Shown here: positions 1-29,399 of the stretch, one piece after another
Position numbering within the stretch: the stretch's first letter is position 1
Layout of the letters: each line of letters opens with the position of its first letter
DNA from: Bigelowiella natans CCMP2755
Lineage: Eukaryota; Protista; Cercozoa
Direction: 5' to 3'
NCBI GenBank assembly: GCA_000320545.1
Contig: ADNK01000526.1
Span: forward strand, 1 to 44,274
Length of the DNA stretch: 44,274 nucleotides
Notes under the pieces: generated by a model
The model's input: the letters and a program-made list of their open reading frames with translations, nothing else
Databases searched by the model: none
Told to the model about the DNA's origin: nothing
Position numbers and translations under genes: made by a program

Positions 1-31
1 AAAAGGTTTAAACGTTACGTCGTAGTTGTCT

Positions 32-73
<42 letters not shown>

Positions 74-499
74 CATGTGATGGTGAAGATGGTTCGCCTT
101 CGCTGTCACCTTCCAGAAACTTGGGGGGGTCAACGATTTTTTTGGAGTAGCTGTATTTATGTGTGTGTGTGTGTGTGTGCGTGTGTGTGCGTGTGCATGA
201 TAGAATCGAAAGCATTGTTATACAAATATGAATCACATCGACCCGCCACCTGTATTGCCGGCCTCCCCCCTCTCCATTCTCCTGGTGCTCCTCCTCCTCC
301 TCCTCCTCCTCCTCTTCTTCTTCAATTCTATCAGCTGTCGCTCCTACTAGCATCAGTGAAGAGGAGGACGATGCCGATGCTACGAGGAGATGCTTCTTCT
401 TGTTCTTTTCCTCATCCTTCGACATCCTGCCATAACACACATCATGCTAATCAGGAGCGAGCATAATGATGATGATGATGATGATGATGATGGAACCAT

Positions 500-1083
500 A
501 GCATGTAACCACTTTTGCCTTTTTGGTCATAGTTTATTCATTGATTTCTTGACCTCTTCTTCCGATCTCGCTCCCTCTTTATGCGTCTACACGTGTGCGG
601 ACAAATGTGAGTTGTCGCTTCAACAGCCCGAACAATATTGAATACACACACACACACACACACACACAAGAACCCCGAACACACACGTGCGTTGTGCGTT
701 TTGTTTCTTCGTATACAAGTAGGCGTCAATTCCAGACAGTAATCTCAGGCTTTATTCGATTTTATGAAAATTAGCCACTAGAGCACCCTCCAGGGAGCTT
801 CATCCCATTAGAGGCGCTCGGTGGTTATTCTATAAGGCGGCACAATTCTGTGTCTTCCTTAATCCAAGATGTGCGACGTGCAGGAATGGACGAGGAAGGT
901 GGGAGGAGAATTACACACTAAGGGGCTGACCTCAAGAATACGTTGATGTGCGGCCGCAGAGGTTCCATCGTACCGTATGCAGAACTGGCAAAAATGAACT
1001 AGGAAACGAGGCGACGGAACAACCCAACGACAGTTATCAGTAAAAACGCTGCATCAGGCACCCTCTTCATATCAATGAATGTA

Positions 1084-1128
<45 letters not shown>

Positions 1129-1533
1129 GGAATGTATTTTCTTTGAAAATAAATCATGAAGGGTGACGACAACGACGACTTTGATGACTATAGGTTATCG
1201 ATATCACACCAATAAATTGTGCCCTTGCTCTTTATAAGATGTTCTCTCTCGGATAAATCGCAAACGAACAAAGTCACCAGTGCTTATTCTTACCGTCTGT
1301 CCCAAAGATCTACCTCGTCGTATTTTTTTTCATTTCTTTCATCATCATCATCATCATCATCATCACCACCACCATCTTGGATTCTTAATTTTGAATGATG
1401 CTTTTATTACCTGGAACTCCATCAGCCGCATCACGCAGGAATCCATTTTTGTGTATCTATTCAACACCAATTATTATCTTCATCGCACAAGTTTGTTTAG
1501 TACAAATACAGTTTGCACGCACACACACACACA

Positions 1534-1573
<40 letters not shown>

Positions 1574-2457
1574 GAGTGAGAGAGAGAGGAGAGAGAAGGG
1601 GGGGGTTGATGGGAGAGCGTGAAAGAATAAGGTAGTGGTAAAGCTAAGAATCTTGTATTTTCACATGCTTCTTATCACTCCTTTCGTGCGGCTATTGCAT
1701 TATCTTTGCTCTCTCTTCGTCAGTTCTTCACTACATGCTTGGTAGTCATCATCATCATTAACATAACTTCTACTGCTGCTGCTACAACAACAACAACAAC
1801 AACTACTACTACTACTACTGCTATTCTTGGACGTGCCGTCTCTTACCTTGAGCCTAGCAGCTTAGGAAGCTCCTTTGCAATCTCCCTCTTTACCCTGTGG
1901 AAGCTCTCCCCTTCACGATGTGAACATTATTACGATGAGGAAAGGGTGATGATCAGGAAGAGTAATGTGATAGTGTTGTTGTTGTTGTTGTTGTTGCTGC
2001 TGCTGCTGCTGCTTGTGAGGCTGAAGAAGGGGGGAGGGTAGACAAACAACCTTGTTTGCCCGCGTTATAGGCCGTTCTTTCACGTTCCAATCGCTCCTCA
2101 GGAGATTCCATGACCTTCAATGTCACCATTTGATGTTAGTACGAGCTTTAGTACCACACAGGCATGCAGACATGTGGCTTCTGCTTTCTGCCAATAACTG
2201 TCCTCTAGTCGTTCTCACCCCCCAGTCCTCCTTCCTGCTCTTCCGTGCCTCCAGAGCGTTCGTTCGCGCCACATGCTTGAGGTGCTATGAGAAAAGGTGG
2301 AGGGGTATAAAACATTACGAGTTGTATTTGGAAACGAGGCCTGAATCATCATCTTCATCATCGTCATCATCTCCATCATCGTCATCATCTTCATCATCCA
2401 CACAAGAGGAACATTTACAATATAAGAGGCAACATAACAACACACACACACACACAC

Positions 2458-2497
<40 letters not shown>

Positions 2498-2982
2498 TTA
2501 TGTATATAATTTACTCAACATCATTATATCGTATCACACATTTTTCCGAATGAGACTAAGACAAATTATCACTCCACTGACCTCTTTGCGTAGATTGTAA
2601 GCAAGCGTGAGCCGCTGTTCGATCGAATCGATCTCCATGTTCCATCTAACATGTACAAGGTTTTACCTCACGGATTTAAGCCCACAGCCCTCCTTCTTCA
2701 ATTCCACTCACTTCCAACACACACCTCTATTTCTAGGACTGTCATATTTTGGGTGCATGTACACCTTCAGGCGCACAACCATCCTTCCTTCCATTATCAA
2801 TCTTCGTGTTACCTATTGAAGTTGTCGATTATCTCCGTCTTGAACCGCCCGTGGACCCCGTACAGTGAGACTTTGAGTATGAATTTCATAGGATGAATGG
2901 GAAATTAGGCGTATCATGATGACGAGGGTTCTGGTGATAAGGAGAGTTTCTCTTCTCCTTCTGTCTCCCCCACCGTTCTCCT

Positions 2983-3027
<45 letters not shown>

Positions 3028-3590
3028 CTCAATGCACCTGCTTCATGGTTGATCATGGAGGCCGACTTGTGCATATGCTTAAGGCCCTGGAATGCCCGGC
3101 CCTTCCCCTGATCGAGGTATACCATCAAATGGGTAGAAATCGGAGTGTAACACAAAGGAGGTGTTTGTGTCAATCTATCCTTCCACACAACCTTGGAGAA
3201 TTGCATCAATGGACCGCTCACACTGATAGCCGCATCACACATTTCCACGACCGACCGCGCATATCGCTCGAATCGTCGCCGCATCATCCGGATGTTCTGT
3301 CGAAATGTTAAAAAGAAAAGTTACAATTTGGAAGCTGCTGTGTTGGGCTTGACATCATGCGTCTTCAAAGCTGGCCACTCGCTTATTTCCGTAGATAATA
3401 TCCCGATCGATTATGAAGCCCGATATTCTTCTTCTTCGTCTTTTCTCTCCCCACCGTTCGAAGAATTGCTTGCTGTTTATTAACCTGTTGCATTGTCTTA
3501 ACGTGGGAGGCATATCGCTTCAGGTCCACATCCTCAGCCTCACTGGTATCTACCCACCACTTTCTCTTCAAACCCCCAACGGTCATGCTG
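500..3590 (-). CDS. Possible multi-exon hypothetical gene(s); exon structure unresolved
   Basis: Non-repetitive blocks bounded by minus-strand AG/GT sites between SSR tracts (e.g. MTVGGLKRKWWVDTSEAEDVDLKRYASHVKTMQQ; LTQTPPLCYTPISTHLMVYLDQGKGRAFQGLKHMHK). No recognisable family, and I could not join the frames cleanly. Confidence 0.25.
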
Positions 3591-4014
3591 CAATGCGTAA
3601 GTATCAAAGCTCTCTATGGCGCGGGGGGGCACAAGAAGGGGGTGGGGAACCCCTACTGCCCTCAGTACGTAGGTACGAATTCGGAGGTACAACAGGAGTA
3701 TTATTTCCTGACATTCCACTTTCGGTATGAAACCCCAAACAATTTATCCCTGCGACATCAATTAAAAGCCTCCGAACAGGATAAAACGCAGAGAGGCGTT
3801 GGGGGAACCTGGAAGTCAGACCTTCGGGATCGCAGATCGTGCAGAGTATCGCACAAATGGCCTGTGTCGTAATGCCGCGACAGGCCTTCTTTCCCCGAAC
3901 GACTTGATCAATCCGGATGCGCTGCCTGGTGCACATCGAAACAGGCACAAGGAACGCTCGGCTGCCCCCCCTTTCTGACCGAGAGGGGAAGAAAATGGAG
4001 TCCTGAGCAAGATC

Positions 4015-7995: not shown

Positions 7996-9819
7996 CTATG
8001 CAGAAGCGAACAATCTCTTACGAATGGTGTTCGTAACTGGTTCCTCCTTGTAAGGCACCGAGGAGTGGTGGAGGAAGATGCGTGGTTTGCCATCAGGGTT
8101 ACGCTTGTAGCCGAAGGTGTACTCAACGCGAGTCTCACTGTTGTCTGCAGCAGAGGTGAAAACGTAGTCTCCCATAGCAATAGCGACAGGACCGTTGAAG
8201 TCGAGCTGATGGTTGCGGAATACAACGTTTTTCCATCCCTTACCACCGTTGATAGCGAATCCAGCATCTTCTCCAACGTATCCGTTCTCGACAACATCGC
8301 CTCCTACGAAGTAAGACATAGCTTCTTCGCCAGTAGGACGGAATGGGTGGTCAGTGGCCTTTGTAGGCTTGAAGAGTACGTTGGTGTTGCCGTATCCGTA
8401 GAGGATTCCAGCTTGCTTGCCAGCCTCTCCGATGTAGTCTCCACCATCGAGGTAGGTCTTACTGATAGTCTGGATTGCGTTAGCCCAGTTTTTCTGGCAC
8501 TCAAGGACCTCAGCTTCTGTGATAGGAGCAACCTCCTCCTTGTAAGGCACTGAAGAGTGGTGAACGAAAATGCGCACATTGCCATCGTCGTTGCGCTTGT
8601 AGCCGAAGGTGTACTCAACGCGAGTCTCGCTACCATCAGCTGCGGAGGTGAAAACGTAGTCTCCCATAGCAATAGCGACAGGGCCGTTCAAGTCAACCTG
8701 GTGGTTGCGGAATACAACTTTGCTCCATCCCTTACCACCGTTGATAGCGAATCCAGCATCTTCTCCAACGTATCCATTATCAACAACATCGCCTCCCACG
8801 AAGTAAGACATAGCCTGTTCGCCAGTAGGACGGAATGGATGGTCAGTGGCCTTTGTCGGCTTGAAGAGTACGTTGGTGTTGCCGTATCCGTAGAGGATTC
8901 CAGCTTGCTTGCCAGCCTCTCCGATGTAGTCTCCACCATCGAGGTAGGTCTTACTGATAGTCTGGATTGCGTTAGCCCATTTCTCCTGGCACTCAGTCAC
9001 TTCCTTCAGAGTAACAGGAGCTGGGCTCTCACTGTATGGTACGGAAGAGTGGTGGAGGAAGATTCGCACTTTTCCATCATCGTTGCGCTTGTAGCCGAAG
9101 GTGTACTCAACCTTTGTTTCTGTTCCAGTGGTCGCACAGGTGAAAACGTATGATCCCATTGCAACAGCGGTGTTACCGTTGATGTCGATGTCGTGATTGT
9201 TAAAGACAACGTTGCTCCATCCCTTGCCGCCGTTGATAGCGAAGCCAGCATCTTCCTTGTAACCTTTTTCGACAGCATTACCTCCTACGAAGTAAGACAT
9301 TGCTTCCTCTCCGGTGGGACGGAAAGGGAACTCAGCTGCTTTAGTAGGTTTGAATAGGACCTTGGATTTGCCATAGCCATAGAGCTCGGCAGCAGCATCT
9401 CCAGCGGTCTTGATGTAGTCACCACCGTTGAGGTAAGTTCTGCTGATAGTTTTGATTGCTTCAGCCCATTTTGATTGCGCATTGAGGACCTCTGCTTCAG
9501 TGATGGTTGCAGATGCAGGTCCAGAAACTGCTACACCTGGACCAGCTGTCTGTAAAACAGAAGGCTTATCGAGAAGCTTGAATGCACCAGCTCCGATTGC
9601 TCCAGCCCCGATCAAAGTGAGCAGAGAATCAGGATCTGCAACGCGGACAGCAGTGCGCTTGGAGTTCATGGGACCAAGAAGCCTCCTTGCCGCGCTCTTT
9701 CCACAGTCCAACCTAGGTGCATGACGGAGTGTAGCTCCTTGTGTACGCTGAATCGTGCGCAGAGGCGAGATAGAGGCCGCAGCCAATGTGGTTACGGTGA
9801 AGAGGAGGGGGACCTGCAT
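7996..9819 (-). CDS. Iota-class carbonic anhydrase (COG4337-type, three tandem domains), 607 aa, intronless, with bipartite targeting presequence
   Basis: Three ~164 aa repeats, each with Q..WA.AI..IS, VLFKPTKA, EDAGFAING, AMG.YVFT, VEYTFGYKR and the iota-CA signature RIF(L/V)HHSSVPY. N-terminus is a signal peptide (MQVPLLFTVTTLAAA) followed by an Arg-rich transit-like region. Confidence 0.92.
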   Translation of the reverse strand: MQVPLLFTVTTLAAASISPLRTIQRTQGATLRHAPRLDCGKSAARRLLGPMNSKRTAVRVADPDSLLTLIGAGAIGAGAFKLLDKPSVLQTAGPGVAVSGPASATITEAEVLNAQSKWAEAIKTISRTYLNGGDYIKTAGDAAAELYGYGKSKVLFKPTKAAEFPFRPTGEEAMSYFVGGNAVEKGYKEDAGFAINGGKGWSNVVFNNHDIDINGNTAVAMGSYVFTCATTGTETKVEYTFGYKRNDDGKVRIFLHHSSVPYSESPAPVTLKEVTECQEKWANAIQTISKTYLDGGDYIGEAGKQAGILYGYGNTNVLFKPTKATDHPFRPTGEQAMSYFVGGDVVDNGYVGEDAGFAINGGKGWSKVVFRNHQVDLNGPVAIAMGDYVFTSAADGSETRVEYTFGYKRNDDGNVRIFVHHSSVPYKEEVAPITEAEVLECQKNWANAIQTISKTYLDGGDYIGEAGKQAGILYGYGNTNVLFKPTKATDHPFRPTGEEAMSYFVGGDVVENGYVGEDAGFAINGGKGWKNVVFRNHQLDFNGPVAIAMGDYVFTSAADNSETRVEYTFGYKRNPDGKPRIFLHHSSVPYKEEPVTNTIRKRLFASA

Positions 9820-10269
9820 GGCTTCGGTTTATGTAGCTTTGCAACCAAAACCACTTCTCCTGAATGTTTTTAACTCTCATCGCAGCTGTTTTCCTGCGAC
9901 TATGTTATTCGCCGTATTTTCGTCATTTTTCCCCTTCACTAGTCAACTGCGAAAGGCGGCGGTTGAAAAGGACGAATACGTTAGCAGGGGTTGAAGTGAA
10001 ATGTAAATTTAACAGCCGGCCGGGCTTCTCGCTATCTTTTGCATGCAAATTGATGGCGTTTTGATCTGGTGAAATGTTGCAAAGGAAGGCGCCAAACAAT
10101 GTGCTGCAATTTATGAACAAATTTACCTGGATTTTCAAATGGACGACAAGGAAGGATCGAAAGAACTGTCTATTGATGAAGACAGCTAAATAAAATGGGA
10201 AGCTGTTCTTTTCGCGCTTTTTTTATATTGCCGTCGGTTTTTTTTCGCATTTTTTAAGGCAATAACAAA

Positions 10270-11945
10270 CCCCTGGGTGAAACCATCAACGACAACACAT
10301 TTGGCCAATGGGACAATGGGATGAGAAACAAGCCGAGAACATCCTACACATTTTGGCTCCAACTAAGGAACCGATCAGTTGTCAAGATCGAACGAAGCAA
10401 AGGAAGTGATGAGACTTTTTGGTTGAATTGTGCTCCCTTCGTTCGGGTCCATGAGAAAACACAGGAGAAAAGTTGGCACTTCTGAGAAAAATTGGTTTCA
10501 AAAACGTCTTTCTTTCTCTTGTTCCGATCATCACTAATTGCTTTCTTTCTTTCCTTCCGATCGCACACTGTGATCGTTTCATTCGTTCTTCACTCACAGT
10601 TTCGTTCAATTTCTCCTGTGTGCCCCAAATTGAGGAGGTTGTGGAAGAGTCAGCACAACCCACGATGCCTCCAGCTGCACCGTTGGAATCACTTTGTCCG
10701 TTCACTCAGACACTCACCGTGACAGGCTTGTCGAGAAGTCTGGTGGACTTCCGCGCACACAATTGGACGCCTTCAGAGCACACACGCAACTGCTCACCCA
10801 TGTCGCTTGTTCGTTGTTCGATTCGAGGCTTGTCTGGCTTGTCACAGCAGCGCCAGTTGTGTGTACAGTCAGAACGTCGAACAACTGAACGTGGACGTTG
10901 TCACATCCAGCCAATCGACCAGCTCCCAGTTCGACTTCCCAAACCAGAAACAAATCGACAGCCACTTGTCGCACCGGCCAAGCTTGGAAGGCTTCACCTG
11001 AGAGCACAGCATGCAAGCAGCAGCGCACGTGTCAAGCAAGATTCGATGTGAACAACTGGTAAACGCGTCCACCAAAGCACCAAAGCTGGAAAGCTGCGCA
11101 TGGTGGAGAATCAATGAGCAATGAGACCGAGCTAGCGTGCGGAGTTGAGAGAACAAATGATGCAACGTGCCTCTTGACGTGTGTGCACGCGCGTGACACG
11201 TGTTGTTCACCAGTGTGTTCACACGTGCTCACTTCATTGCATTGGATTGTCTTCAGACGTTTCCGTTTGACACAAAGGTCATTGTGAATCTCTTGCTTCA
11301 CGCGCATGCAAAAACACAAGGAACTCAACATTGTGGCCTCCTTGTTGAAATCACAAGCTAGCTAGCAAGTGATGTGCACATGGCTATGTGCTAACATCAC
11401 ATCACAGACAACATGAATGGATGTGCACCTGCATCTCTCATGTGCTCTAGCCAGCTAGTGCAAGTGCTGATTTGCACTGCACACAAACCCTGTGTTGCAG
11501 TCTAGCAGTGTTGACAGCGAAATGATTGATGTGTGTGGCATGCCACACACTAGCACACGCTAGCACGGCTTTGATCACATGCACGTTGAGAGACGTGTCT
11601 CTCAATGAGAACTTGCATGTGTGCGCATGCATGGTGGCATGCACACAATTGCACAGTCTAGCAGTGCGTGCAGTGCGCGTGTGCGATTGATCTAGTGATC
11701 TAGTGATGCGCGCACTATGTGCACAATTTCACGCATTGCGCCTGATCGAGCATGCTACAACATGTGCGGTCATCATCACGTGCTGCCAAAGCGTAGCATG
11801 CAGATCACTTTTGTGCATTTGCACACTTTGTGCACATGTCATCAGCACTAGAGCTGTGTGATGGTGATGTGCGCAGGCTTGCTAGCTTGCACGATTGAGC
11901 GAGGCACCGACAGGGCACAATCCACATGAGTTCTGCACTGCATCA
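10270..11945. other. TpA-depleted, CA/TG-enriched intergenic patch (strongest example)
   Basis: By-eye count: 4 TA in 10381-11340; 17 TA in 11341-11940, of which 12 are CTAG and the other 5 are CTA or TAG. Confidence 0.9.
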
Positions 11946-12069
11946 CCATAATGGTGTTGCACATGGTGCAGTTTGGACAATAAATCGTTTCACATGATGT
12001 GCACAATGCAAAGAGTGTTATAATTGGTGTCTCAGTGACTCAGCGCTGTAAACATAGCTGTGTTAAGGT

Positions 12070-13128
12070 TTAGCATCCAAGCTCCTCAGCTACTTCTTTA
12101 GGGAGAGTTGGATTCTTGCACAAGCGTTTCAGATCCTGTTGACCGATGACCGCATCCTCAAATGATGTTCCAGAAAGATTTGCTTCTTCAAAACTAGCGC
12201 CCGTGATCACGGCGTTCGTAAATTTGGAACCCGACAAATCCGACTTATCAAATATGACTCTGTCGAGGACAGAGTTTGAGAAGTCACAATTTTTAAAACT
12301 TGCCTCGGCAGCGTATGCCTTCGACATTACGACATCTGTGAAATCGGCCTGATCGAAGGATCCTCCCTGGAAAAGTCCCCCGGAAAGGGTCTTTCCCCTC
12401 AAGTCGCGTTTCTGAAAACCACAAAGCAAAAGTGATTAGTAAATCCAACTAAAAGAAGCGATGAGAAACATTAAAGTGCAGACGAGCTGTCAGGCCTCTT
12501 TGAGAATAGTCTACGTAATATTTCACAATATACCTCTAACTTGCAGAGTCTGAGGTCAAGTTCTCTATCTGAAGCTGCGTTGGACTGGCCGATAGTGTTG
12601 CCTCCTGTTGCCAGCTCACAACGATCAGGGTTAGGATCAATAGGGGGGAACTTGCGCCCAGCGGCCTCAGCCCATTTTGTAGCGATCATTCCAATTGCGG
12701 AGACACCTCCCAGCATCATTCCACGGCGGGAAAGCTGACCCTGGGATTGCCCATTACCAGCGTGGATACGGGTTAAAGCCCCCCTTGATGAGACGGGTAG
12801 CCTCAATTCGCCACCACTTCCGTCTACAAATGCAACAATATCATAAGATAAACGTTCATATGCCTCCTAATTCTAGCTGCTTAAGGAAGGTGCCGGACAT
12901 GACTTTCGGTGAATCATCTTGCAGCAGCGACGGGGGGGTTACGTCGACACCACGGGGATCCATATTTTTTGCTCCCCTTCTTACTGCGACATGTTGTTTT
13001 AAATGCTTTCTTAGAAAATTTTGCACAATTGGGTAACCTCTCCTGGCGAGCATGATAAGGGCGGCCAGAAGGCATGCGTTTAGGAGGCATAGCGACAGCA
13101 GCGAGCGTGAGGTGGCGAGAGCCATCAT
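12070..13128 (-). CDS. Thylakoid lumen pentapeptide-repeat protein, TL17 (17.4 kDa)-like; spliced
   Basis: Exons 12823-12534 and 12411-12070 (GT-AG intron 12533-12412, phase 0) give PPIDPNPDRCE..GNTIGQSN...LDLRLC..LRGKTLSG..VVMSKAYAAEASFK..DRV.F.KS.L..LCKNPTL..LGC, matching the plant TL17 pattern. A twin-Arg Tat signal (SRRGMMLGGVSAIG..AEA) is present. A signal-peptide exon starts at 13128; its donor site is uncertain. Confidence 0.85.
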
Positions 13129-13551
13129 CGATTTTTTCAGACTTGATGACGGCCAAAGAGCGAAAGGTTAATGGAAAAGGTAGTTTAATTTTTACAGGAA
13201 TGCCATTCGACAAGCTTCAAAATAGAAAAAATCCATCGGTCCGATTTTACATTTGGATAAATTGGGTGAGGTTGCCGATAAGAATTTTGAGCTTGCGGCT
13301 TTCTGCTTGCTGCGACTCACAAATTCACGAATAATTCCAGTAGATTTGCGACCTATGTGTAAAAATTTTGGCGGATCAGTACGAGTAAGATGTTCTCAGG
13401 ATAAAAAATCACCCAGTTCTGCCATGTGCATTGGATTACGGAGATTTTCTTTACGCTGGGCTTTGGATCTTTGTCGTAGGAAATAATCATAGGTTATTCC
13501 TACTAATTTTCCCAGGTTGGAGGAAGGAGGCTCGGTAATGGTTGAGCTACA

Positions 13552-14330
13552 ATGACCTCGAAGACGAATAAAGGAGGGGGAAGGAAAAGTTCTGCTTCTG
13601 ATATCATCGCCATTTCCTCTATCAATGAGGTACATGAATTTACATCGACGGTTAAGGCTCATAGTTCGTCATACGACTGATCTCTTCATCTTTCTTTATA
13701 AGGTACCAAAATGGAAGAACATTAGAGGCTCTTACACGGGGAAGGAAGAGGAGGAGAATGAGGAAGAGGATACGGTATCAAAAATTTGCCTCGTTTGTTT
13801 TCTGATACAATTTTAAAAGTTTAAACTTTAGCCATGGACGAACTTCAGGCAACTTAGAAACCAACGGGAGGTAACCATGGCATGCAAGATTCGAATATGA
13901 TATAAATATATGAACACCTACTCATAGGAAAAAGGCTACTCAACGATAACGCCTTCCCGTTCGAATAGGGTCAGTAGGATTGGTCACGTGACTCAACTCA
14001 ACTGAACTATTCCTTCCAATATTCATCTTGTAGATAATAAAACGTCGCCGGATTTTGCCAAAAAGCGCTAATCAACCAGATGTTCGGGTAAATGTGGTCA
14101 TAAAGAGACTTCGGGTCCGACAGTCGATACGAGAACAAGGTGTTCCTTCAAAATCGCCCCATCTCACATCAAGACATCAGCCATTGCCATTGCCGTTGAA
14201 TAGCGATGATGCTGGTAGTGATGCTTGTGGGAAGGAAAAAGAATTGCATAACACGAAATCTTCGAGTGACAACGAAATCAATTTGCTGGCCCTCGACGAC
14301 GGTTCGTTTCCGACGGTAATTCCAAGCTAG
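13552..14330 (+). CDS. Small five-exon hypothetical protein
   Basis: Consistent phase-0 GT-AG exons: MTSKTNKGGGRKSSASDIIAISSINE | VPKWKNIRGSYTGKEEEENEEEDT | PWTNFRQLRNQRE | EKGYSTITPSRSNR | IIKRRRILPKSANQPD...VIPS*. Confidence 0.5.
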
Positions 14331-16348
14331 CACTATTGAGGATGCACACATTCCATGGTGGAAGAGCAAATTATGAGTACTCAACTGTTGTGATTTAGGT
14401 TTCCAGTCTCCCGCTAGCGATGTGATCAAGCAGATTTTTTAAAAATTGTTGGAGAGATTGCATGCATGCATGCATAAATATCATTTCATTGATGAAGTGC
14501 CGAATGATGACGGCTTCAATAGTATGGGAACGTGAAGTTAGGATTGCAAAACAATATTTGGTTTGCAAATTGCCGCTTCCATTAAAAGTTGTGGCATTGC
14601 AAATGGACATGCCTGAATCGTGTGTTTTTGTGACACGCGGGGTCAGCGTACTAGCATTGGAGGGTAGACGAGGCGTATCGCCGTTCATAGATCAAAAACA
14701 TCTCGACGCCTGAATTGTAACAAGATTTGTGCACTTTGTTTGCTCAACATGGCAGGCTCAAAGCACACAGCTAGACAGCACTGCACAGCACCATGCAGGC
14801 ATGAACGAAAGAACACATCGTGTTTTATTGGATGCCCTGAAAACTGTGCCGCCATCACATGGTGGGCAAACACACATCATGCATTTAAACAACGCTCATT
14901 GCCAAATGTAGATAAAATCAGTGCACATGACAATTGCTAGATTGTGCGCAATCTGCTGCTAGCAATGCCATCACAAGCCACCGGCCAGCTTGAATGAACC
15001 TCCTGTTAGCCTAGCAACGGCCCGTCCTAGCGTCCCATAGTCCTGCTAGCCTGCCCATCGTATCGCCTCACGCATCACTTGTTCCAGTGTTGACGATGCA
15101 GATGGACAAACAGCGTCATTCCGTGCGAACATCAAACATCAAAACTTGAATTGGCAAAGTCAACCGCATCAAACATCATGCACAACTCCAGAACTGCACC
15201 ATCTAGACCATTCGAGAGCTTGCCGTTCTGCGAGCATCCGCGCCGCACGCTAGCCCGGCTGTCACAGCACCTGACATGCCAATCCAAATGTGATCAGTTT
15301 CATGGATTTTGCGTGCTGTCTGTCACTGTTAGATTGATGTCACACCAACGTCAGCGCAACCAAGTGTGTCACACGCGAACACATGATGCCGCTGGCGTGT
15401 TGTCGCGCGCCCATCGCCAAGTCGTGCTGGCATGGCTGCTGCATGGCGACACACACTCACTCTGGCACTCGCTGACTCGCTCTGCACGTCTAGGCAGGTG
15501 TGATCGATCGTTCACTAGTTCACTTTGACAGCGCACAAAACGAGACACACACCAGCACACTCTCTGCACTCACTGAGACATGCAATGGTCGTGCTCTGCA
15601 TGCACGCAACAACGCACTTGCCACCGACAAATCTCAAAGGCTTGCCCACTCTTTGTGTGGACACACGCAGTCTCCATGGCGTACCGGGTTTTCGGCACAT
15701 GTGTTACTCTAACACATGTGTGCTCAAAAACACGTGTACTGAGCTACATGTGTCAGGACAACTTTCATCTCACACCGACTTGCTTCCGGCTGTGGCCCCT
15801 CATCACATCATCCGAGAATGCTCCACCGATCAAGTGTCCATTTTGAGACCACGGAGTGGTCGGAATGCGACGGATCAACGACAGAACCATCCACTTGAAA
15901 TCAATCTTCAACGAGTTGCAACCTTCGGATGCTTGACGCACTCCTTGGACGACGAGCTGGCGAGACAAGAAGCAATTTGCCTGCAAATCGATCTAGTGCC
16001 AGAGTGGGGGTGTGGGAATCAGACCTTCGAAGAAAGGAAACTGGAATTGTCGAAAGGAAAAGAGTGGATGATGTGGAGCATGAAAGGGAGAGAGTGACAG
16101 TTGGGTGAGCTTCTAGAATGATGAACAATGAACGTGATGATGGACTACATCTAGACTTGCCTGTGAAGGCTGAGAAGAGAGAAAGAAGCTCCGCCCGATC
16201 AAGTTGTCACAACAGTGTTAAAGAGGTGATAATTGTTACCTGCGACATGAAAACTTTTAAGTCGTATTTATCAATGGCTCTTGAATCACATTTTCAAACT
16301 TCAAATTCTTGCAACTAATGGGAGACGACTGACCAAGCTTTGAACTCG

Positions 16349-17983: not shown

Positions 17984-18221
17984 TTTGCACAGCTACATCA
18001 GGATGGCTTTCAGCTTTGAAAATGTTCAATCACTTCATCACATCAGTCTCTCACACGTGTCTGTCATGGCCTGCCGTGTGCACGATGCACGATGCCCAGG
18101 TTTTTCCTGGCACATGAAACACACGTGGAGACAAAGAGACGCAGCATGAGCGCTGTGGCCGCTGCACGTGCAAGGATAACTGTTGAAAACATTCAATCGT
18201 TTCATTGCCATCCGTCTCACA
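17984..18221 (-). mobile_element. Two degenerate copies (17984-18053, 18112-18221) of the dispersed TRAGACGGATGYAATGAA repeat family
   Basis: Reverse complements match 22483-22610 and 28623-28750 (tttgcacagctacatcaggatg..., ttgaaaacattcaatcgtttcattgccatccgtctcaca, gagcgctgtggccgctgca). Confidence 0.7.
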
Positions 18222-18402
18222 TTGGAAACATTCAAAGTCAGCATGTTCATGCCGGTTGTGGGTGGCAAAAAAAAAAAAGCCTGCATGGCAGGACCGTGCC
18301 CAGATGCCTGCGCCACGCGGCGGCACAACGCTGCACACTACATCTGTTTGACAAATTTAGCACTACATCTAAACAAGTCTCTGCTGCTCGATCCTACATG
18401 AA

Positions 18403-22370: not shown

Positions 22371-22482
22371 ACCCCTTTCGATCTTGAAGGACTTTGGACT
22401 TTCAATGATTAGAATATGAAATTCCTTCAGCTTGATGAAAAAAAAATGTATGATGTAATCATTAATGATATGTGATTGAATG

Positions 22483-22610
22483 TGTGAGACGGATGTAATG
22501 AATTGATTGAATCTTTTCAATGGTCATCCTGATGTAGCTGTGCAAAGCAGGGGCCACAGCGCAGATGTTGTGTCTGTTTGTTTCCGCCATGATGTGTTTC
22601 ATGCATGTGA
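22483..22610 (+). mobile_element. Copy of dispersed repeat (putative non-autonomous DNA transposon end)
   Basis: tgagacggatgtaatgaa...caatggtcatcctgatgtagctgtgcaa...ttcatgca aligns with 28623-28750 over ~125 nt. Confidence 0.7.
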
Positions 22611-23907
22611 AGCAGATGATCAATGTCTTGCAAGATGCCACATGTGTCGCGTGTGTGGCATCTGCCTCTTCGCATTGTCCTCGTGACAGATGACATGAAA
22701 TTTCCGAGATTTCCCACCCCACAGATGGCGCGCATCCATGTGATGGCAACACATGGCAATTTCAACTTGATGCCAGTGATTCAGAGGATGGAAGGAAACC
22801 AAGACGTTTTGGCTGTAAAGCTCTTGTCAGATCATGCGACCATTCTGTTCTTCAAAGGCGGACAGAGCAGCAGATTCAACCATTTTGTGATGCACTTTGA
22901 GGTCTTTTTTGAGTGCTGATGTTGTCGTTCGAATGGTTGGAAGTTCGTCATCTAGCAGATCGTTGCAAGATGAGACTGAGTCGGCGAAACAGATGTGCTC
23001 TGTTGTGTGACATTGTTTGGTTTTGATCCTTAACAAGTTAGCCAAAGCTGCTCCAAACGTGCACTTCTTTGTTGACGCATCTGACACGTCTCTCATGTGC
23101 TCACGTGTCATGTGCAAGCGACATTTGTGACGTGCATGCATGGCACAAACGCCTAGCTTTCAAAACTTGTCCAAAAAAGAAAAAACGTGCAGCCCCGTGC
23201 ACCATGCTAGCATGCCACTGCATGCCATCATGGTGGTGAGCTAGTGAGGTGGACATCGATGCCGATTCTCAAGTCACATGATCGATCGCCCATGTGCCCA
23301 AACAAGGCTAGAAAGCGCTGCTGTGCAGTCAGAAAGAACGCACACCGCACTGCTGTCATGGCTGCTAGCGGACAGCTAGATGGCCAACTTGACATGCATG
23401 CACGTGGTTGCGGGCGCATCTAGTGCATGGCTAGCCATGCACACAGCGCTGCTAGCTAGCTACGTCTGCAAGCTGCACGTCAATGCTGCGTGTCTCTTGC
23501 ATGTCGCATCGCATCGCAGATTGAGGAAGCTGCGCTGCTCCTGTTGGTCGATTTCAGGTAACTACCAACGGCTGTAGCTCCGACCATTTATATATTAGCT
23601 TGAACTTCGAGATTGCAGCCGAATGCGCATGCTTATCGCGTTGATGCCATGATTGCACAAATGGCAAATTTTGCATCACATGCAGTCAACTGTCCCGCAA
23701 CTGGATGCGTGCAAACATGCACATTCATGGGCACACAGCGCTTTAGGTTGATTTGATGTCTCACAATGGAACTTTGTTCTCAACACAACATTCGATGATT
23801 TTCACTTCACAACATCGGTTGAATCTGAACTCTTCATTGATGATCTTCTTCTAACTTGACATTCGCCTCCTTGTTGGTGTGATGATACTCTTACATTTTC
23901 TTTCCTA

Positions 23908-23963
23908 CAACATCTTCATTGATGACATTCTACCAACATCTTCATTAATGGCATTCTACCAAC
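23908..23963. repeat. 26 bp tandem duplication
   Basis: caacatcttcattgatgacattctac / caacatcttcattaatggcattctac / caac. Confidence 0.85.
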
Positions 23964-24041
23964 TGGACTTTTGCCACATTGTTGGTGAAACATTAGACCC
24001 TCTAATGTTTCACTTTCTACTGATGGAAATGAGGTTCGGAT

Positions 24042-25978
24042 TTAGTTTGCGCCAACGCCAGCGAAGCTGAACCCCTTCTTTTCAGCGGGTGCGGCAGGTG
24101 CTTCCTCCTTGTAAGGCACCGAGGAGTGGTGGAGGAAGATGCGTGGTTTGCCATCAGGGTTGCGCTTGTAGCCGAAGGTGTACTCAACGCGAGTCTCACT
24201 GTTGTCTGCAGCAGAGGTGAAAACGTAGTCTCCCATAGCAATAGCGACAGGACCGTTGAAGTCGAGCTGATGGTTGCGGAATACAACGTTTTTCCATCCC
24301 TTACCACCGTTGATAGCGAATCCAGCATCTTCTCCAACGTATCCGTTCTCGACAACATCGCCTCCTACGAAGTAAGACATAGCTTCTTCGCCAGTAGAAC
24401 GGAATGGATGGTCAGTGGCCTTTGTAGGCTTGAAGAGAACGTTGGTGTTGCCGTATCCGTAGAGGATTCCAGCTTGCTTGCCAGCCTCTCCGATGTAGTC
24501 TCCACCATCGAGGTAGGTCTTACTGATAGTCTGGATTGCGTTAGCCCAGTTTTTCTGGCACTCAAGGACCTCAGCTTCCGTGATAGGAGCAACCTCCTCC
24601 TTGTAAGGCACCGAAGAGTGGTGAACGAAAATGCGCACATTGCCATCGTCGTTGCGCTTGTAGCCGAAGGTGTACTCAACGCGAGTCTCGCTACCATCAG
24701 CTGCGGAGGTGAAAACGTAGTCTCCCATAGCAATAGCGACAGGGCCGTTCAAGTCAACCTGGTGGTTGCGGAATACAACGTTTTTCCATCCCTTACCACC
24801 GTTGATAGCGAATCCAGCATCTTCTCCAACGTATCCATTATCGACAACATCGCCTCCCACGAAGTAAGACATAGCCTGTTCGCCAGTAGGACGGAATGGG
24901 TGGTCAGTGGCCTTTGTAGGCTTGAAGAGAACGTTGGTGTTGCCGTATCCGTAGAGGATTCCAGCTTGCTTGCCAGCCTCTCCGATGTAGTCTCCACCAT
25001 CGAGGTAGGTCTTACTGATAGTCTGGATTGCGTTAGCCCATTTCTCCTGGCACTCAGTTACTTCCTTCAGAGTAATAGCAGCGGGTGCCTCCTAAATCAA
25101 CACACACGCACAAAGCATACAAAATAAGTTATGAGTCGCTGCAAGCAAGGTGTATCAAATTCAGGACTCACCACGTATGGCACGGAAGAGTGGTGGAGGA
25201 AGATGCGAACTTTTCCATCTTCATTACGCTTGTAGCCGAAGGTGTACTCAACGCGAGTTTCCTTTCCAGTGGTCGCACAGGTGAAAACGTAGGATCCCAT
25301 TGCAACAGCGGTGTTGCCATTCAAATCGATTTCATGGTTATCAAAGACTACATCACTCCATCCCTTGCCGCCATTGATCGCGAAGCCAGCATCCTCTTTG
25401 TAGCCATTAGTTACGGCATCGTTTCCAACGAAGTAAGACATTGCTTCCTCTCCGGTGGGACGGAAAGGATACTCAGCTGCCTTCGTAGGTTTGAATAGGA
25501 CCTTGGATTTGCCGTAGCCATAGAGCTCGGCAGCAGCATTACTTGCAGTCTTCACGTAGTCACCACCATTCAGATAGACCCTGCTGATAGACTTGATAGC
25601 ATCAGCCCATTTTCTCTGCGCATCCAAGACTTCAGCCTTCGTGACATCAGAAGCTTTAACAGGGCCAACGGTCATCTTAGCAATTGGCTTTGGAGCAGCT
25701 GGCACTGGAGCAACAGCGTTATCGCCACCAAGGAGCTTCATAGCTCCAGCACCGATAACTCCAGCACCAACGAGGGTCAGAAGAGTATCGGGATCAGCAG
25801 CTTGCACTTCAGCACGACGGCTACGTCGCGAGGTCATAGCACCGAGGAAATCTCTCGCTGCTCCCCTCCCATATTCCATACGAGGAGCATGGCGAGAGCC
25901 CGGGGCACGGCGGACAGATCGAAGCGAGAGCTGCGCCGAAGCGAGCGTAGCTACAGCCAGTGTAAAGATCACTCGCAT
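24042..25978 (-). CDS. Second iota-class carbonic anhydrase paralog (three COG4337-type domains), ~618 aa, exons 25978-25172 and 25091-24042
   Basis: An 80 nt phase-0 intron (GTG|GTGAGT...TTTAG|GAG) joins ORFs 25097-25978 and 24042-24872 into PYV-EAPAAITLKEVTEC, collinear with paralog 1. Three HHSSVPY motifs; signal peptide plus Arg-rich transit-like N-terminus. Confidence 0.92.
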
Positions 25979-26834
25979 AGAAGGCTATTGACTTGTGAGT
26001 TGTGCGTGGAGAGATGATCAATGTGGCTATCGAGCAGCTTTGCAAACTTCGACGATTCTACGTATATAAAATGCCCTATTTTTTTTCTTTCCGGAGGAGC
26101 TTCTCTCCGTTTTTGCAACAAAAGCGAACGGCGTTCAAGTCTCTTCCTATCCAGAGTTGCGGAAAAAACACATCGCTTTTATCAGCCTTGTAAAGTTTCC
26201 GTGCTGGATCCTATTTCTCTTAACGACAAGCAAAAAGTTTTTTTTTAAATATAAATTCACATATATTTTCATGTAGGAATCAAATATCCGATGTTCCCCG
26301 GAGCATTTCTAGGAGTGTAGAACCGGCTCTTCTTAAACTAGAAAATAATAAGTCTGAGCGTGTAACCATGTCGCAGGATAAAATCTTCCGCCCTTCTCCA
26401 CCCGAGTTAGTTTGTCTCCATCGGCAATAATATCTAGGAAATAATAACCGCTCTTCTTCCGTCAGAAAGAATCGAGGAAATGATGAAGGTGAGAAAACCT
26501 ATGAAAGCTCATCGTTTTTTCTGTTACGACTTGGCGCAGCTTCGGGTTGAGTTTTGTCGATGTTGTCGGCTACACTCGACGGCGCGACTCACCCCCTTTC
26601 CTTTTCCCCACGGTTTCGCGAGTCTACGCAGCAGACGCAGGTACGGGTTTTTGTTGTACCCTCAAACTCTCGGAGGCAGTACGTCTGATGGGGGATACCA
26701 ACCTCCACCATGGAGATCCTGATATCAGAAGTCGGGAAGCATCCAACCGACAATTATTGTGTTATTCACCGTACATCCGCTCATCCTGAACAGGTTTGGG
26801 ATAGAAAAAGGAATGTGACGGAAGTGCACCTGGG

Positions 26835-28019
26835 ATGTCCCATCAACTGGAAGTCAGGATGATCCGTAGTATGGTGGCAAGTGCAATTGTAGCACTCACA
26901 GCTATACGAGTGCTATCCCTCTCCACCACTTCAAAATTGAAAAAGTCTACAGGTACGGTGTCTGTGGGACATATTGAGGAAAAAATCACCAAAAATGATA
27001 TGGCACTCGCCAAGGACGTAGCGTTTTCGCTCAAGCGTGCCCCTCTTCGGTGGAAATCCGTGCAGAGTCTCGCATTCACATCAGGAGAAATAGTAGAGGT
27101 TGGAGAGTTGCAATGTCAATCGTACACGTTGCTACTGCGACTTGAACGTAATGTAAAGGATGTTCGTGCCGTGAAAAGAGTTTTCGTATACAGTCATGGC
27201 TTCCCTGACAGTAGTGTGACACCCGAGGCCATCTCAGAAGCCAAGAGGCTTGCAGCAGGTGGGGAAAGGCAGAAAACTCCCCTTTTTTTCGCATCCCGCA
27301 TGCCAAGGAAGCTATGTGAGATGGTCATGCGCAAGGCAGGACCAAACAACGCATTTGTTTGCTTCAATAGCAGAGGTATTCCAGGTTCTGGTGGTGAGTT
27401 CCATGAGAAGACCCTGACGGATGACCTAGACGATTTACATGACACCGTCGTTGCTATCAGGCAGCATTATCCCAACGCGTCTGATGTTGTGCTCTGCGGC
27501 TTATCAACAGGGGCCTTTCTGACTCTAGCGTACCTTGATAGCACACGCAGTAGCAGCTGTTCGATCCTTCCCACCTGTGCAATCGTCTTTGCCTGTGTAG
27601 ATGACATCCCAACCTCGAAGGTTCTCGATTTCACTCCGAAGCAGATATCTGACATGAACAAGAAAGGGTTTTGCACGACAGATTTCTATCCAGTGGGTTG
27701 TAATGGTGTTCCAGAGAGGAAGAGATTGGATGTTGGCTACCTCAGATCATACGACAAGTTTTGGGGCGCTACAACGATGGCCCAGCGAATCAAGACACCC
27801 GTTCTTCTAATCCATGGCACTGCTGATAAGCATGTACCATATTCGCATGCGAAGAGGCTTCTTAAGTGCTTGCAATCTCACAGCTCGCTCGGGTCAAAAG
27901 GCTTCGATCTCATCACAGTGGAGGGAGGAAATCATTTCCTCTCAAGCAAGAAACACTTCAAGCTGGCTGAAAGGGAGATTTTGAGATGGCTGTCTGCTCT
28001 CATGAGTGGATATTCGTAG
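26835..28019 (+). CDS. Alpha/beta-fold serine hydrolase
   Basis: HGF oxyanion motif, G-L-S-T-G nucleophile elbow, PVLLIHGTAD acid residue and EGGNH histidine. Hydrophobic N-terminal segment; 394 aa ORF. Confidence 0.85.
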   Translation: MSHQLEVRMIRSMVASAIVALTAIRVLSLSTTSKLKKSTGTVSVGHIEEKITKNDMALAKDVAFSLKRAPLRWKSVQSLAFTSGEIVEVGELQCQSYTLLLRLERNVKDVRAVKRVFVYSHGFPDSSVTPEAISEAKRLAAGGERQKTPLFFASRMPRKLCEMVMRKAGPNNAFVCFNSRGIPGSGGEFHEKTLTDDLDDLHDTVVAIRQHYPNASDVVLCGLSTGAFLTLAYLDSTRSSSCSILPTCAIVFACVDDIPTSKVLDFTPKQISDMNKKGFCTTDFYPVGCNGVPERKRLDVGYLRSYDKFWGATTMAQRIKTPVLLIHGTADKHVPYSHAKRLLKCLQSHSSLGSKGFDLITVEGGNHFLSSKKHFKLAEREILRWLSALMSGYS

Positions 28020-28270
28020 CACGCACTAATGACGAGACGAAAGCAAATGTGAAGCTGGTATTACATGTATAAATTTCTGCACGTATTTCTGCCCAGCTCC
28101 GAGTGTAGCCAGTAAAGAAATACCACAGCGATATGTACATCTGTAGTTGCGTCGTATATAGCCGCTGAGAATTCCGACTAATAAGGCGATGCCAGCGTAT
28201 ATATAGTATTATTTAATTGCATTCTTGTCTGTACTCTGCTAAAATATATCCTGTTTATAATGCTGCTACG

Positions 28271-28865
28271 TGTAAGACGGATGTAATGAATCAAATTAAA
28301 TTTGTTCAATGGTCATGCATCCTCATGTAGCTGTGTATGTAGCTAGATGCATATGTGTTGTGAGCTGCTAGCAGCTATAGCTAGAGGCAACGCAGACCCC
28401 ATATAAGTAGGCACAGGGGTCAGCGCAGTCCTAGCATAGATCGCTTACGTATGCATATAAAATGATCGCTCATTTGTTCACTACATGGCATCCGTCTCAT
28501 GTAAGACGGATGCAATGAATCAAATTAAATTTGTTCAATGGTATAATGGTCATCCTGTTGCTTTGTGCTAGCTAGCATTGTATAATTGTTTGCTTGTACA
28601 GATCGCTACGTTCTAGACCATGTATGAGACGGATGCAATGAAGAATTAAATTTTTTCAATGGTCATCCTGATGTAGCTGTGCAATGCAGCGGCTACAGCG
28701 CTAATGTTACATCTGTTGGTTTCTGCCACCACGTGCTTCATGCATTTGAAAGCGTCCTCATGCGACCGATGTTGCCGCGCACTGCGCGCAGCAGTTCTGG
28801 AGTCCTTTTCAGCCTTTGTCAGCCGGTTCGTGTCGTCGTTGCGATTCATGATCGCGCTCATTTGA
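28271..28865 (+). mobile_element. Cluster of three direct copies (28271, 28501, 28623) and one inverted terminus (28488-28500) of the same repeat; 28271-28500 is MITE-like
   Basis: taagacggatgtaatgaatcaaattaaatttgttcaatggt recurs at 28273 and 28502, with tgagacggatgcaatgaa at 28625 and inverted catccgtctca at 28489. A shared internal atgatc(gc)gctcatttg occurs at ~28462 and ~28848. Confidence 0.7.
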
Positions 28866-29399
28866 TTGCGCAATCTGATTTGTTCTCGAATGTGTGTTGG
28901 ACATTGCAGGAGATGACTATATATAATGAGTATATTTGTATGCGAACTCATTATGCATAATCCAAAAAACGCCACAAGAGCAGCTAGCAGACCCAGAGAC
29001 GCGCGTTGCATTGTGCACGTAGCGAACAGGCACGTGCATGCGATGCGACATTGATTCGCTAAATGAAGCGCGGTGAGCTTGGTTTCTCCAGTTGCGGCAT
29101 TCTACGTTACCCATCAAATTTAGAGGCACGACGTATGTAATGGCACCGTATGTGGAAACACTTTGCATGAATATTATGATTATTTACAATATCATTGTAG
29201 TATTCTATTGGCCATGGTGCCACCCCTTTCAATTCCATCACACCGTCTGCCTGAGAACCTCATGCAACATTGTTGCTACTGCGCTACTCTTCAGTTTTTT
29301 TCCCTCCCTGAAGTCAGACCGATGAATATTAATAAACACGCACCGAAATTCACAGGAACGAAACAATATTAGAATTGGAAATTTTGCAATATGAGTTAT

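What the first reader, a model, noticed from the sequence alone, without database searches (positions are those of the whole stretch)
22483..28750. Repeat copies record the direction of mutation: independent TG and CA outcomes at the same ancestral TA
Seen when aligning copies: ttGtGtc (22568) vs ttaCatc (28707), implying ancestral ttatatc. ggcCac (22552) vs ggcTac (28691). tAagacgg (28273, 28502) vs tGagacgg (22485, 28625, rc 18220). gatgTaatg (22492, 28280) vs gatgCaatg (28509, 28632) vs rc catCacatc (~18036). attGaat (22505) vs attAaat (28295). The minus-strand translations read NRH vs NRC, consistent with an ancestral Tyr codon. Inference: TG in one copy and CA in another at the same site is most simply explained by TA ancestry with A->G on either strand. 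An ancestral CG would also give TG/CA, but TA, not CG, is the third state observed.
Basis: partly seen in the sequence, partly recalled or inferred. Interest (0 to 1): 0.85.

Follow-up and report, generated by a model that had tools for sequence, protein, structure and literature searches.

The report
TpA-hypermutation scars in algal LINE tails
The repeats are broken tail ends of a very abundant retrotransposon of the alga Bigelowiella natans, and their TG/CA/TA differences do record a real process that turns TA into TG or CA in mobile DNA, but a 2026 preprint has already measured that process in this alga.

Summary
The repeats are the 3' ends of 5'-truncated copies of an endonuclease + reverse-transcriptase LINE. 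It lies on the minus strand at 22485, 28273, 28502 and 28623, and on the plus strand at 18222. The genome holds roughly 1,500-1,900 tails.

I aligned 57 copies. Sixteen long copies are 99.0-99.7% alike and carry TA at 102 sites. Every other long copy has TG or CA at 93-99% of those sites upstream of the last 650 nt. The outcome is independent in each copy and is almost never CG. Ordinary CpG sites stay CG.

Outgroup LINE proteins have Tyr or Phe where converted copies have Cys or His.

The genome is B. natans: a JGI Bigna1 gene model maps onto it exon by exon. Mettrop et al. (bioRxiv 2026) already showed TpA->TpG/CpA hypermutation there by mutation accumulation. This scan also reported it on three other pieces of the genome. 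The verdict is real but already known.

New details: element-precise boundaries, a spared 3' end, CTAG resistance, no strand runs, and loss of Tyr without new stop codons.

The parts
28623..28916 (-). Young 5'-truncated LINE copy of 294 nt (last 91 codons of the ORF, TAA stop, 21-nt 3' UTR ending ...CCGTCTCA). It is essentially unconverted.
   Evidence: 98.3% identical to ref 3355-3651 of the full-length copy L031. It has a sharp common 3' end. TAs resume exactly at the 5' junction at 28918.
22485..23141 (-). Older LINE copy of a diverged sub-lineage, with a ~155-nt internal deletion. It is heavily TpA-converted. Its stop codon TAA has become CAA, so the frame reads through. It sits in a TA-poor island at 22497-23558.
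   Evidence: DNA match 22485-22605 (84%) and 22604-22804 (78%). tblastn to the LINE ORF reaches 22964, and ORF 22827-23141 continues the similarity. The island 22497-23558 holds 15 TA, 11 of them CTAG.
28273..28345 (-). 73-nt mini-copy of the LINE tail, of the '...CCGTCTTA' sub-lineage.
   Evidence: 88% identical to ref 3570-3646. The same variant tail occurs in L018 and L027.
28502..28545 (-). About 44-nt mini-copy of the LINE tail, same sub-lineage.
   Evidence: 98% identical to the 28271 copy over 43 nt. 88% identical to the consensus.
28488..28499 (+). 12-nt piece of a LINE 3' end in the opposite orientation, abutting the 28502 tail (tail-to-tail, 2 nt between).
   Evidence: Read directly. 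The same tail-to-tail arrangement across a short YR microsatellite occurs in L027.
18100..18222 (+). Diverged LINE tail with its sense on the plus strand, inside a TA-poor stretch at 17995-18338 that holds a single TA.
   Evidence: 82% identical to the consensus over 111 nt. Inverted repeat I1, alignment A1, TA list.

Best explanation
The repeats are 3' ends of dead, 5'-truncated copies of a single-ORF non-LTR retrotransposon (APE endonuclease + reverse transcriptase, about 3.65 kb, tail ...CCGTCTCA followed by a TA/YR microsatellite) in Bigelowiella natans.

Their TA/TG/CA differences are scars of this alga's TpA-specific hypermutation. At a TpA, the A on one strand or the other is read as G, giving TG or CA and then protecting the partner. 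This explains why CG almost never appears.

Shown here:
- The process saturates long LINE copies, converting 93-99% of TpA sites upstream of the last ~650 nt.
- It acts independently in each copy and on both strands, without strand runs.
- It stops within about 100 nt of the 5' junction.
- It largely spares the last ~650 nt.
- It disfavours T-A-G, with CTAG nearly immune.
- It cannot create stop codons. Dead copies keep long open frames while losing nearly all Tyr to Cys or His.

Inferred, not shown: it acts on integrated DNA after insertion, and its chemistry is adenine deamination. The preprint's candidate for the enzyme is an ADAT2-like protein.
For: LINE identity:
- L031 carries a 1183-aa ORF with RVT_1 (7e-15) and Exo_endo_phos_2 (9e-7).
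- 72 hits share the 3' end, with 5' start points spread from 1 to 3605.
- Tails are microsatellites.
- 1452 first-look candidates; Logan depth of the last 140 nt is about 1800-1900 times the flank.

Conversion:
- Matrix of 102 TpA sites by 57 copies.
- Copy C1853_796 has 58/66 TpA converted but only 7 other transitions and 0 transversions in 1769 sites. Copy C1193 is half converted, with a patch boundary.
- Pooled transitions per site: TpA 0.40, CpG 0.027, other 0.026-0.033.
- TA per 100 nt is 0.1-0.3 inside converted copies and 6-9 in flanks.

Direction:
- Three-state sites.
- Outgroup Tyr.
- B copies keep intact 1179-aa frames.

Independent reads: of the 40 variable places listed out of 70 in Illumina libraries laid on an unconverted copy, 16 of 23 A>G/T>C places are TpA, although TpA is 13% of A/T bases. 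Seven more are CA/TG places where other copies have TA.

Organism: Bigna1 model 76607 maps colinearly on contigs C1947-C1946.

Direct measurement of the process: Mettrop et al. 2026.
Against: No de novo conversion was seen in a LINE here. All 20 runs (16 studies) hold 0.99-1.00 of the words of window 10200-16199, so nothing shows the window's islands are changing now.

The sample of copies is biased.

The short tails in the window carry few TpA sites. Their states at ref 3623 and 3634 may have been inherited from source elements.

TG exceeds CA 371:283, which may be a context effect or a slight strand effect.

Why the last ~650 nt are spared is unexplained. The enzyme is unknown.
Confidence: 0.88

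Rival explanations
1. The process is real, but the particular differences among the window's short tails were inherited from differently converted source (master) elements and did not arise in place after insertion.
For: All 16 B copies share TG at ref 3623 and CA at 3634, so converted states can be inherited. The 28273 and 28502 mini-copies share a distinct tail variant also seen in L018 and L027. The 22485 copy belongs to a sub-lineage whose best relatives are only 90% identical. Seven transversions in 120 nt show old divergence.
Against: The 22485 copy lies in a TA-poor island about 1 kb long whose residual TAs are mostly CTAG. This is the mark of in-place saturation. Conversion patterns in long copies are independent per copy.
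Confidence: 0.3
2. The A->G changes are made on the LINE RNA or first-strand cDNA during retrotransposition (ADAR-like or cDNA deaminase editing), not on integrated DNA.
For: ADARs prefer a 5' U, as the preprint itself notes. Each copy has its own pattern. There is a slight excess of sense-strand A->G (371 vs 283).
Against: A->G and T->C are interleaved at random, with runs-test z between -1.6 and +1.3 in 13 copies. RNA editing would give one type only. Copy C1193 is converted in only part of its length, and B copies carry small local clusters. TA density is already lowered in the 100 nt of host DNA outside the 5' junction (3.6 vs 6-9 per 100 nt). In the preprint the same signature arises de novo in single-copy viral inserts in cultured lines.
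Confidence: 0.06
3. Ancestral CpG sites decayed by methyl-cytosine deamination to TG or CA, and TA arose as a double mutant.
Against: CG is present in only 10 of about 890 cells at these sites. The 127 true CpGs of the consensus are retained, for example CG 36-44 of 38-46 copies. CpG transitions run at 0.027 per site. Outgroups encode Tyr (TAY).
Confidence: 0.01
4. A fungal-RIP-like C->T process (CA/TG -> TA) made the TA-bearing copies, so they are the mutated ones.
For: RIP in Neurospora connects the same dinucleotides in the opposite direction. The TA-bearing copies are the majority in my sample.
Against: Converted copies split between TG and CA at the same site, which a CA->TA process cannot produce. 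The TA-bearing copies have intact 1179-aa frames and conserved Tyr. The TA-bearing consensus still has 238 CA and 179 TG. The mutation-accumulation data give the direction directly.
Confidence: 0.01
5. A base-calling or assembly artefact of a DNA modification at TpA: top-strand reads call TG and bottom-strand reads call CA.
For: It would mimic the mutual exclusivity of TG and CA. I held it at about 30% before the read data and the paper.
Against: Illumina reads from two 2026 libraries and Logan contigs of 2021 and 2025 runs show the same class of variants. The preprint's calls come from Illumina NovaSeq. Converted states are inherited identically by 16 copies.
Confidence: 0.01

Closest known systems
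TpA->TpG/CpA hypermutation of integrated viral DNA in Bigelowiella natans (Mettrop et al., bioRxiv 2026, 10.64898/2026.01.13.699255)
   Same: Same organism and same signature: only A->G/T->C, only on TpA, on both strands, with TpA loss and CpA+TpG gain. The preprint already found RT, endonuclease-RT and DDE Pfams enriched among TpA-poor CDS.
   Different: The preprint measured two viral inserts and used window and CDS statistics. It has no copy-by-copy analysis of a LINE family and no outgroup polarisation. It does not mention boundaries, the spared 3' end, Tyr loss or stop codons.
Repeat-induced point mutation (RIP) of Neurospora and other fungi
   Same: A dinucleotide-specific, saturating, patchy transition mutagenesis that inactivates mobile elements in the genome.
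   Different: The direction is opposite: RIP is C->T, mainly CpA->TpA, and creates stops. The process here also hits single-copy DNA (the preprint's NCLDV insert; window islands), so duplication is not shown to be the trigger.
ADAR A-to-I hyperediting and APOBEC3 editing of retroelements in animals
   Same: Deamination-type defence that leaves clustered transitions in retroelements. ADAR prefers a 5' U.
   Different: ADAR acts on RNA and marks one strand. APOBEC gives C->T/G->A. Here both strands of integrated DNA carry interleaved A->G changes.
APE-type non-LTR retrotransposons (LINEs) with microsatellite tails
   Same: Single ORF with APE and RT, massive 5' truncation, shared 3' end, simple-repeat tail.
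   Different: The clade is not assigned. The nearest relative is a second B. natans/Tara Oceans LINE at 61% identity, then a LINE of unidentified source at 44%, and all other hits are 29% or less.

Membership tests
Non-LTR retrotransposon (LINE), APE type | Reverse transcriptase domain | tested here: met
   RVT_1 E=7e-15 at residues 551-770 of the L031 ORF.
Non-LTR retrotransposon (LINE), APE type | Apurinic-like endonuclease domain N-terminal to the RT | tested here: met
   Exo_endo_phos_2 E=9e-7 at residues 124-241.
Non-LTR retrotransposon (LINE), APE type | Copies share the 3' end and are truncated at variable 5' points | tested here: met
   72 hits reach the 3' end, with starts from ref 1 to 3605. 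The 3' flanks are unrelated to one another.
Non-LTR retrotransposon (LINE), APE type | Target-site duplications | not tested
   The 5' junctions were not examined base by base.
B. natans TpA hypermutation (Mettrop et al. 2026) | The organism is Bigelowiella natans | tested here: met
   EukProt/JGI model Bigna1/76607 maps exon by exon, colinearly, on G000 contigs C1947 and C1946 at 82-98% (six of the ten segments at 96-98%), and ends in a LINE copy.
B. natans TpA hypermutation (Mettrop et al. 2026) | Changes are almost only A->G/T->C, and only on TpA | tested here: met
   688 TG/CA outcomes at about 890 TpA cells. Clean copies show 58 TpA conversions against 7 other changes. In the tail, 68 transitions and 0 transversions at TpA.
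B. natans TpA hypermutation (Mettrop et al. 2026) | Both strands are hit (TG and CA outcomes) | tested here: met
   371 TG against 283 CA, interleaved with no strand runs.
B. natans TpA hypermutation (Mettrop et al. 2026) | Arises de novo in culture at the locus | tested here: inconclusive
   20 runs hold 0.99-1.00 of the words of window 10200-16199. Short multi-mapping reads on a LINE copy cannot show new events.
Fungal RIP | C->T at CpA, producing TpA and stop codons | tested here: not met
   The direction is TA->TG/CA by outgroup and by three-state sites. No stop codons are created; L031 keeps an 1183-aa frame.
CpG methylation decay | Ancestral CG at the variable sites | tested here: not met
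   CG occurs in 10 of about 890 cells, and true CpGs are retained.
ADAR-type RNA hyperediting | A->G on one (the transcribed) strand only | tested here: not met
   A->G and T->C alternate at random within each copy.

The most novel reading that the evidence does not exclude
The mutator is guided by the element's own sequence rather than by regional chromatin. In 10 long LINE copies the TA-free domain starts within about 100 nt of the 5' junction, whatever the truncation point. It saturates the body and then stops about 650 nt before the 3' end, even though the same T-A-G-type contexts are 93% converted upstream. Its motif is T-A-H, with CTAG nearly immune. That would point to a transcript- or small-RNA-guided DNA adenine editor, a kind of genome defence not yet described mechanistically.
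Probability: 0.3. Interest if true: 0.65.

Novelty: already known. Interest (0 to 1): 0.35.

Why it matters
A TA-specific, GC-increasing hypermutation aimed at foreign DNA is a rare kind of eukaryotic genome defence, a mirror image of fungal RIP. The LINE family is a natural experiment on it, offering dozens of independent insertions of one sequence, intact and converted. From these one can read the motif, the domain limits, the strand behaviour and the kinetics.

Conversion appears to come in bursts: some copies are about 90% converted yet otherwise 99.6% identical to intact ones.

There is also an annotation hazard. The process removes TAA and TAG and never makes stops. Dead elements therefore look like long intact genes, with His and Cys in place of Tyr.

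The core discovery, however, belongs to the 2026 preprint.

Tried and rejected
- Rfam at gathering thresholds on the whole window found no RNA family.
- My first idea, a conserved 3'-UTR element or small RNA downstream of genes, was dropped once the ORF was found.
- The first singleton spectrum was misleading. Most TpA sites were excluded as multi-allelic, and the 'singletons' came from single representatives of sub-lineages. I replaced it with the B-consensus analysis and outgroup polarisation.
- A length threshold for conversion (short copies unconverted) was dropped. Short copies contain only the 3' sites that are spared in long copies too.
- A context explanation for the spared 3' end was rejected. 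The same TAG/CTA contexts are 93% converted upstream against 18% downstream.
- Pfam on ORFs of the window's other TA-poor islands found nothing.
- A paper search for the DRR accession of a transcript contig found nothing.
- Read laying gave only 38-nt ChIP reads and fragmented contigs over the repeat. It could not show de novo events or confirm a whole converted copy.
Full report
**What is in the window.** The quoted strings are all present; one is a base off. The repeat finder recovers the copies at 22483-22611, 28271-28313, 28500-28542 and 28621-28750, plus an inverted one near 18127-18165. The window is eukaryotic and rich in microsatellites. It carries an ammonium transporter ORF, an alpha/beta-hydrolase ORF and two genes made of 164-residue tandem repeats. 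Rfam finds nothing.

**What the repeat is.** A search of the window's own genome with 28621-28750 gave 1452 first-look candidates, and the 40 that were scored are 93-100% identical.
- The copies share a sharp end at TGAGACGG on the plus strand and run to variable lengths on the other side.
- The longest copy, L031, carries on the opposite strand a 1183-residue ORF with Exo_endo_phos_2 and RVT_1 domains.
- The repeat is therefore the 3' end of an APE-type LINE: the end of the ORF, the stop codon, and a 21-nt UTR ending CCGTCTCA, followed by a TA or other YR microsatellite.
- In 262 kb of fetched loci, 72 hits reach the 3' end, with 5' ends anywhere from ref 1 to 3605. This is the classic dead-on-arrival pattern.
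- Logan word depth over the last 140 nt is about 1800-1900 times that of the single-copy flank. The body runs at about 10-60 times (rough, since depth is not a copy number).

**The conversion.** I projected 57 copies on the L031 sense strand.
- Sixteen long copies, which I call B, are 99.0-99.7% like their consensus and have intact 1179-residue frames. The B consensus has 102 TpA sites between ref 958 and 3646.
- Every other long copy has TG or CA at almost every one of these sites, with a different pattern in each copy.
- Per copy: L031 has 48 TG, 43 CA, 2 CG and 5 TA. C1853_796 has 58 of 66 converted, with only 7 other transitions and no transversion in 1769 other sites. C1193 has its first 21 sites intact and then 53 of 100 converted, with 7 other changes.
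- Pooled transitions per site are 0.40 at TpA, 0.027 at CpG and 0.026-0.033 elsewhere.
- Sixty-three dinucleotide sites show TA+TG+CA without CG. True CpG sites remain CG in about 95% of copies.
- TA density is 0.1-0.3 per 100 nt inside converted copies and 6-9 in the flanks.

**Direction.** I added an outgroup.
- The B consensus has 25 Tyr in the part covered. The L031 copy has Cys at 14 of these positions and His at 9.
- A related LINE at 61% identity (P0001) has Tyr or Phe at 22 of the 25.
- The whole L031 protein keeps 2 Tyr in 1183 residues.
- TA->TG/CA cannot make a stop codon: TAA can only become TGA or CAA, and TAG only TGG or CAG. The open frame of L031 is therefore no sign of function. 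In the 22485 copy the stop became CAA and the frame reads through.

I ran it on the 128 nt corresponding to 28623-28750 in 51 copies.

| Site class | Transitions / cells | Share |
|---|---|---|
| TpA | 68/510 (no transversion) | 13.3% |
| CpG | 24/408 | 5.9% |
| C or G of CpA/TpG | 26/1377 | 1.9% |
| Other | 39/4233 | 0.9% |

The cells are not independent. One has TG+CA in the consensus but Tyr in the outgroup. One, the terminal CA, cannot be polarised. Within the window alone the signal is weak, because the 22485 tail has 17 differences of which 7 are transversions.

**Properties of the process seen here.**
- Strand choice at neighbouring sites is random: runs-test z lies between -1.6 and +1.3 in 13 copies.
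- Pooled agreement between copies at a site is 0.60. About 0.51 would be expected by chance, so there is some site preference.
- The 3' neighbour of the converted A is favoured in the order C (0.48) > T (0.44) > A (0.39) > G (0.32).
- Upstream of ref 3000, TAG/CTA-type sites are 93% converted and other sites 99%. Downstream of 3000 the same type is only 18% converted. The last ~650 nt are therefore spared by position, not by context.
- At the 5' junction the TA density changes within about 100 nt.
- In the window's TA-poor islands the residual TAs are mostly CTAG: 11/17, 13/27 and 11/24, against 5.5% window-wide.

**Independent reads.** Twenty runs from 16 studies hold 0.99-1.00 of the sampled words of window 10200-16199, so there is no sign of ongoing change there. 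I laid two 2026 Illumina ChIP libraries (38-nt reads) and two sets of Logan contigs on an unconverted B copy, L045.
- 40 of 70 variable places were listed. Of the 23 listed A>G/T>C places, 16 are TpA, although TpA makes up 13% of A/T bases.
- Seven more are CA/TG places where other copies have TA.
- A 2407-nt contig confirms the 3' junction and flank without a difference.
- This excludes a base-calling artefact. It cannot show de novo events.

**Organism and prior knowledge.** This scan's earlier notes named Bigelowiella natans and a 2026 preprint. I checked both.
- A protein search with the RT region returned JGI model Bigna1/76607, which is EukProt Bigelowiella_natans_P007249.
- Its kinesin exons and LINE-derived end map colinearly on G000 contigs C1947 and C1946, six of the ten segments at 96-98% and the rest at 82-89%.
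- The preprint is Mettrop et al., bioRxiv 10.64898/2026.01.13.699255. It reports that 231 of 302 de novo single-nucleotide mutations in 15 mutation-accumulation lines fall in two viral inserts. All but one are A->G or T->C, and all the GC-biased ones are on TpA, at about 6e-7 per site per generation. It finds RT, endonuclease-RT and DDE domains enriched among TpA-poor CDS, and it proposes an ADAT2-like deaminase.
- It does not analyse a LINE family copy by copy. It does not mention boundaries, Tyr loss or stop codons.
- The phenomenon is therefore already known, and this scan had already reported it on three other pieces of this genome.

**Verdict.** The thing itself is a set of LINE tails carrying scars of a known, still mechanistically unexplained mutator. 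The added value lies in the family-wide polarisation and in the positional and context rules.

Noticed in passing
window 10251-12000 and 14751-16000: Two more TA-poor, TG+CA-rich islands (down to 1 TA per 250 nt). About half of their residual TAs are CTAG. Both are single copy in the genome and have no Pfam match, so the mutator's mark is not restricted to recognisable repeats.
   Followed up: partly
window 28488-28512; also L027, and 11 of loci L001-L030: LINE tails cluster. Mini-copies of 45-110 nt lie within a few hundred nt of a main copy, in tandem or tail-to-tail across a short YR microsatellite. This suggests insertion into the microsatellite tails of earlier copies.
   Followed up: partly
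window 7996-9819 (-) and 24042-25978 (-): Two paralogous genes built of 492-bp (164-residue) tandem repeats, each repeat ending in an HHSS motif, with a weak DUF4440 match. From memory they resemble iota-class carbonic anhydrases; I did not test this.
   Followed up: no
G000 C1946:7279-8049 (JGI model Bigna1/76607): A JGI gene model fuses a kinesin with the last 257 residues of a LINE copy. This is an annotation artefact of the kind favoured by stop-free converted elements.
   Followed up: partly
window 22462-22752 (-): In the 22485 LINE copy the stop codon TAA has become CAA, so the frame runs through the 3' UTR into flanking DNA.
   Followed up: yes
ref 2930-3560 of the LINE (L031:1090-1720): Even the intact B lineage has almost no TA here (2 sites in 660 nt). 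It has His where outgroups have Tyr, and 28 sites in the family show only CA+TG. The source lineage was itself partly converted in the past and went on transposing.
   Followed up: partly
P0001 cluster: A second LINE at 61% identity, with 41 Tyr, occurs in B. natans and on Tara Oceans surface-water contigs about 5 kb long.
   Followed up: no
L045 3641-4191: In both ChIP libraries, read depth in the flank 1 kb downstream of a B copy rises to about 10 times the single-copy level. Another repeat probably lies there.
   Followed up: no
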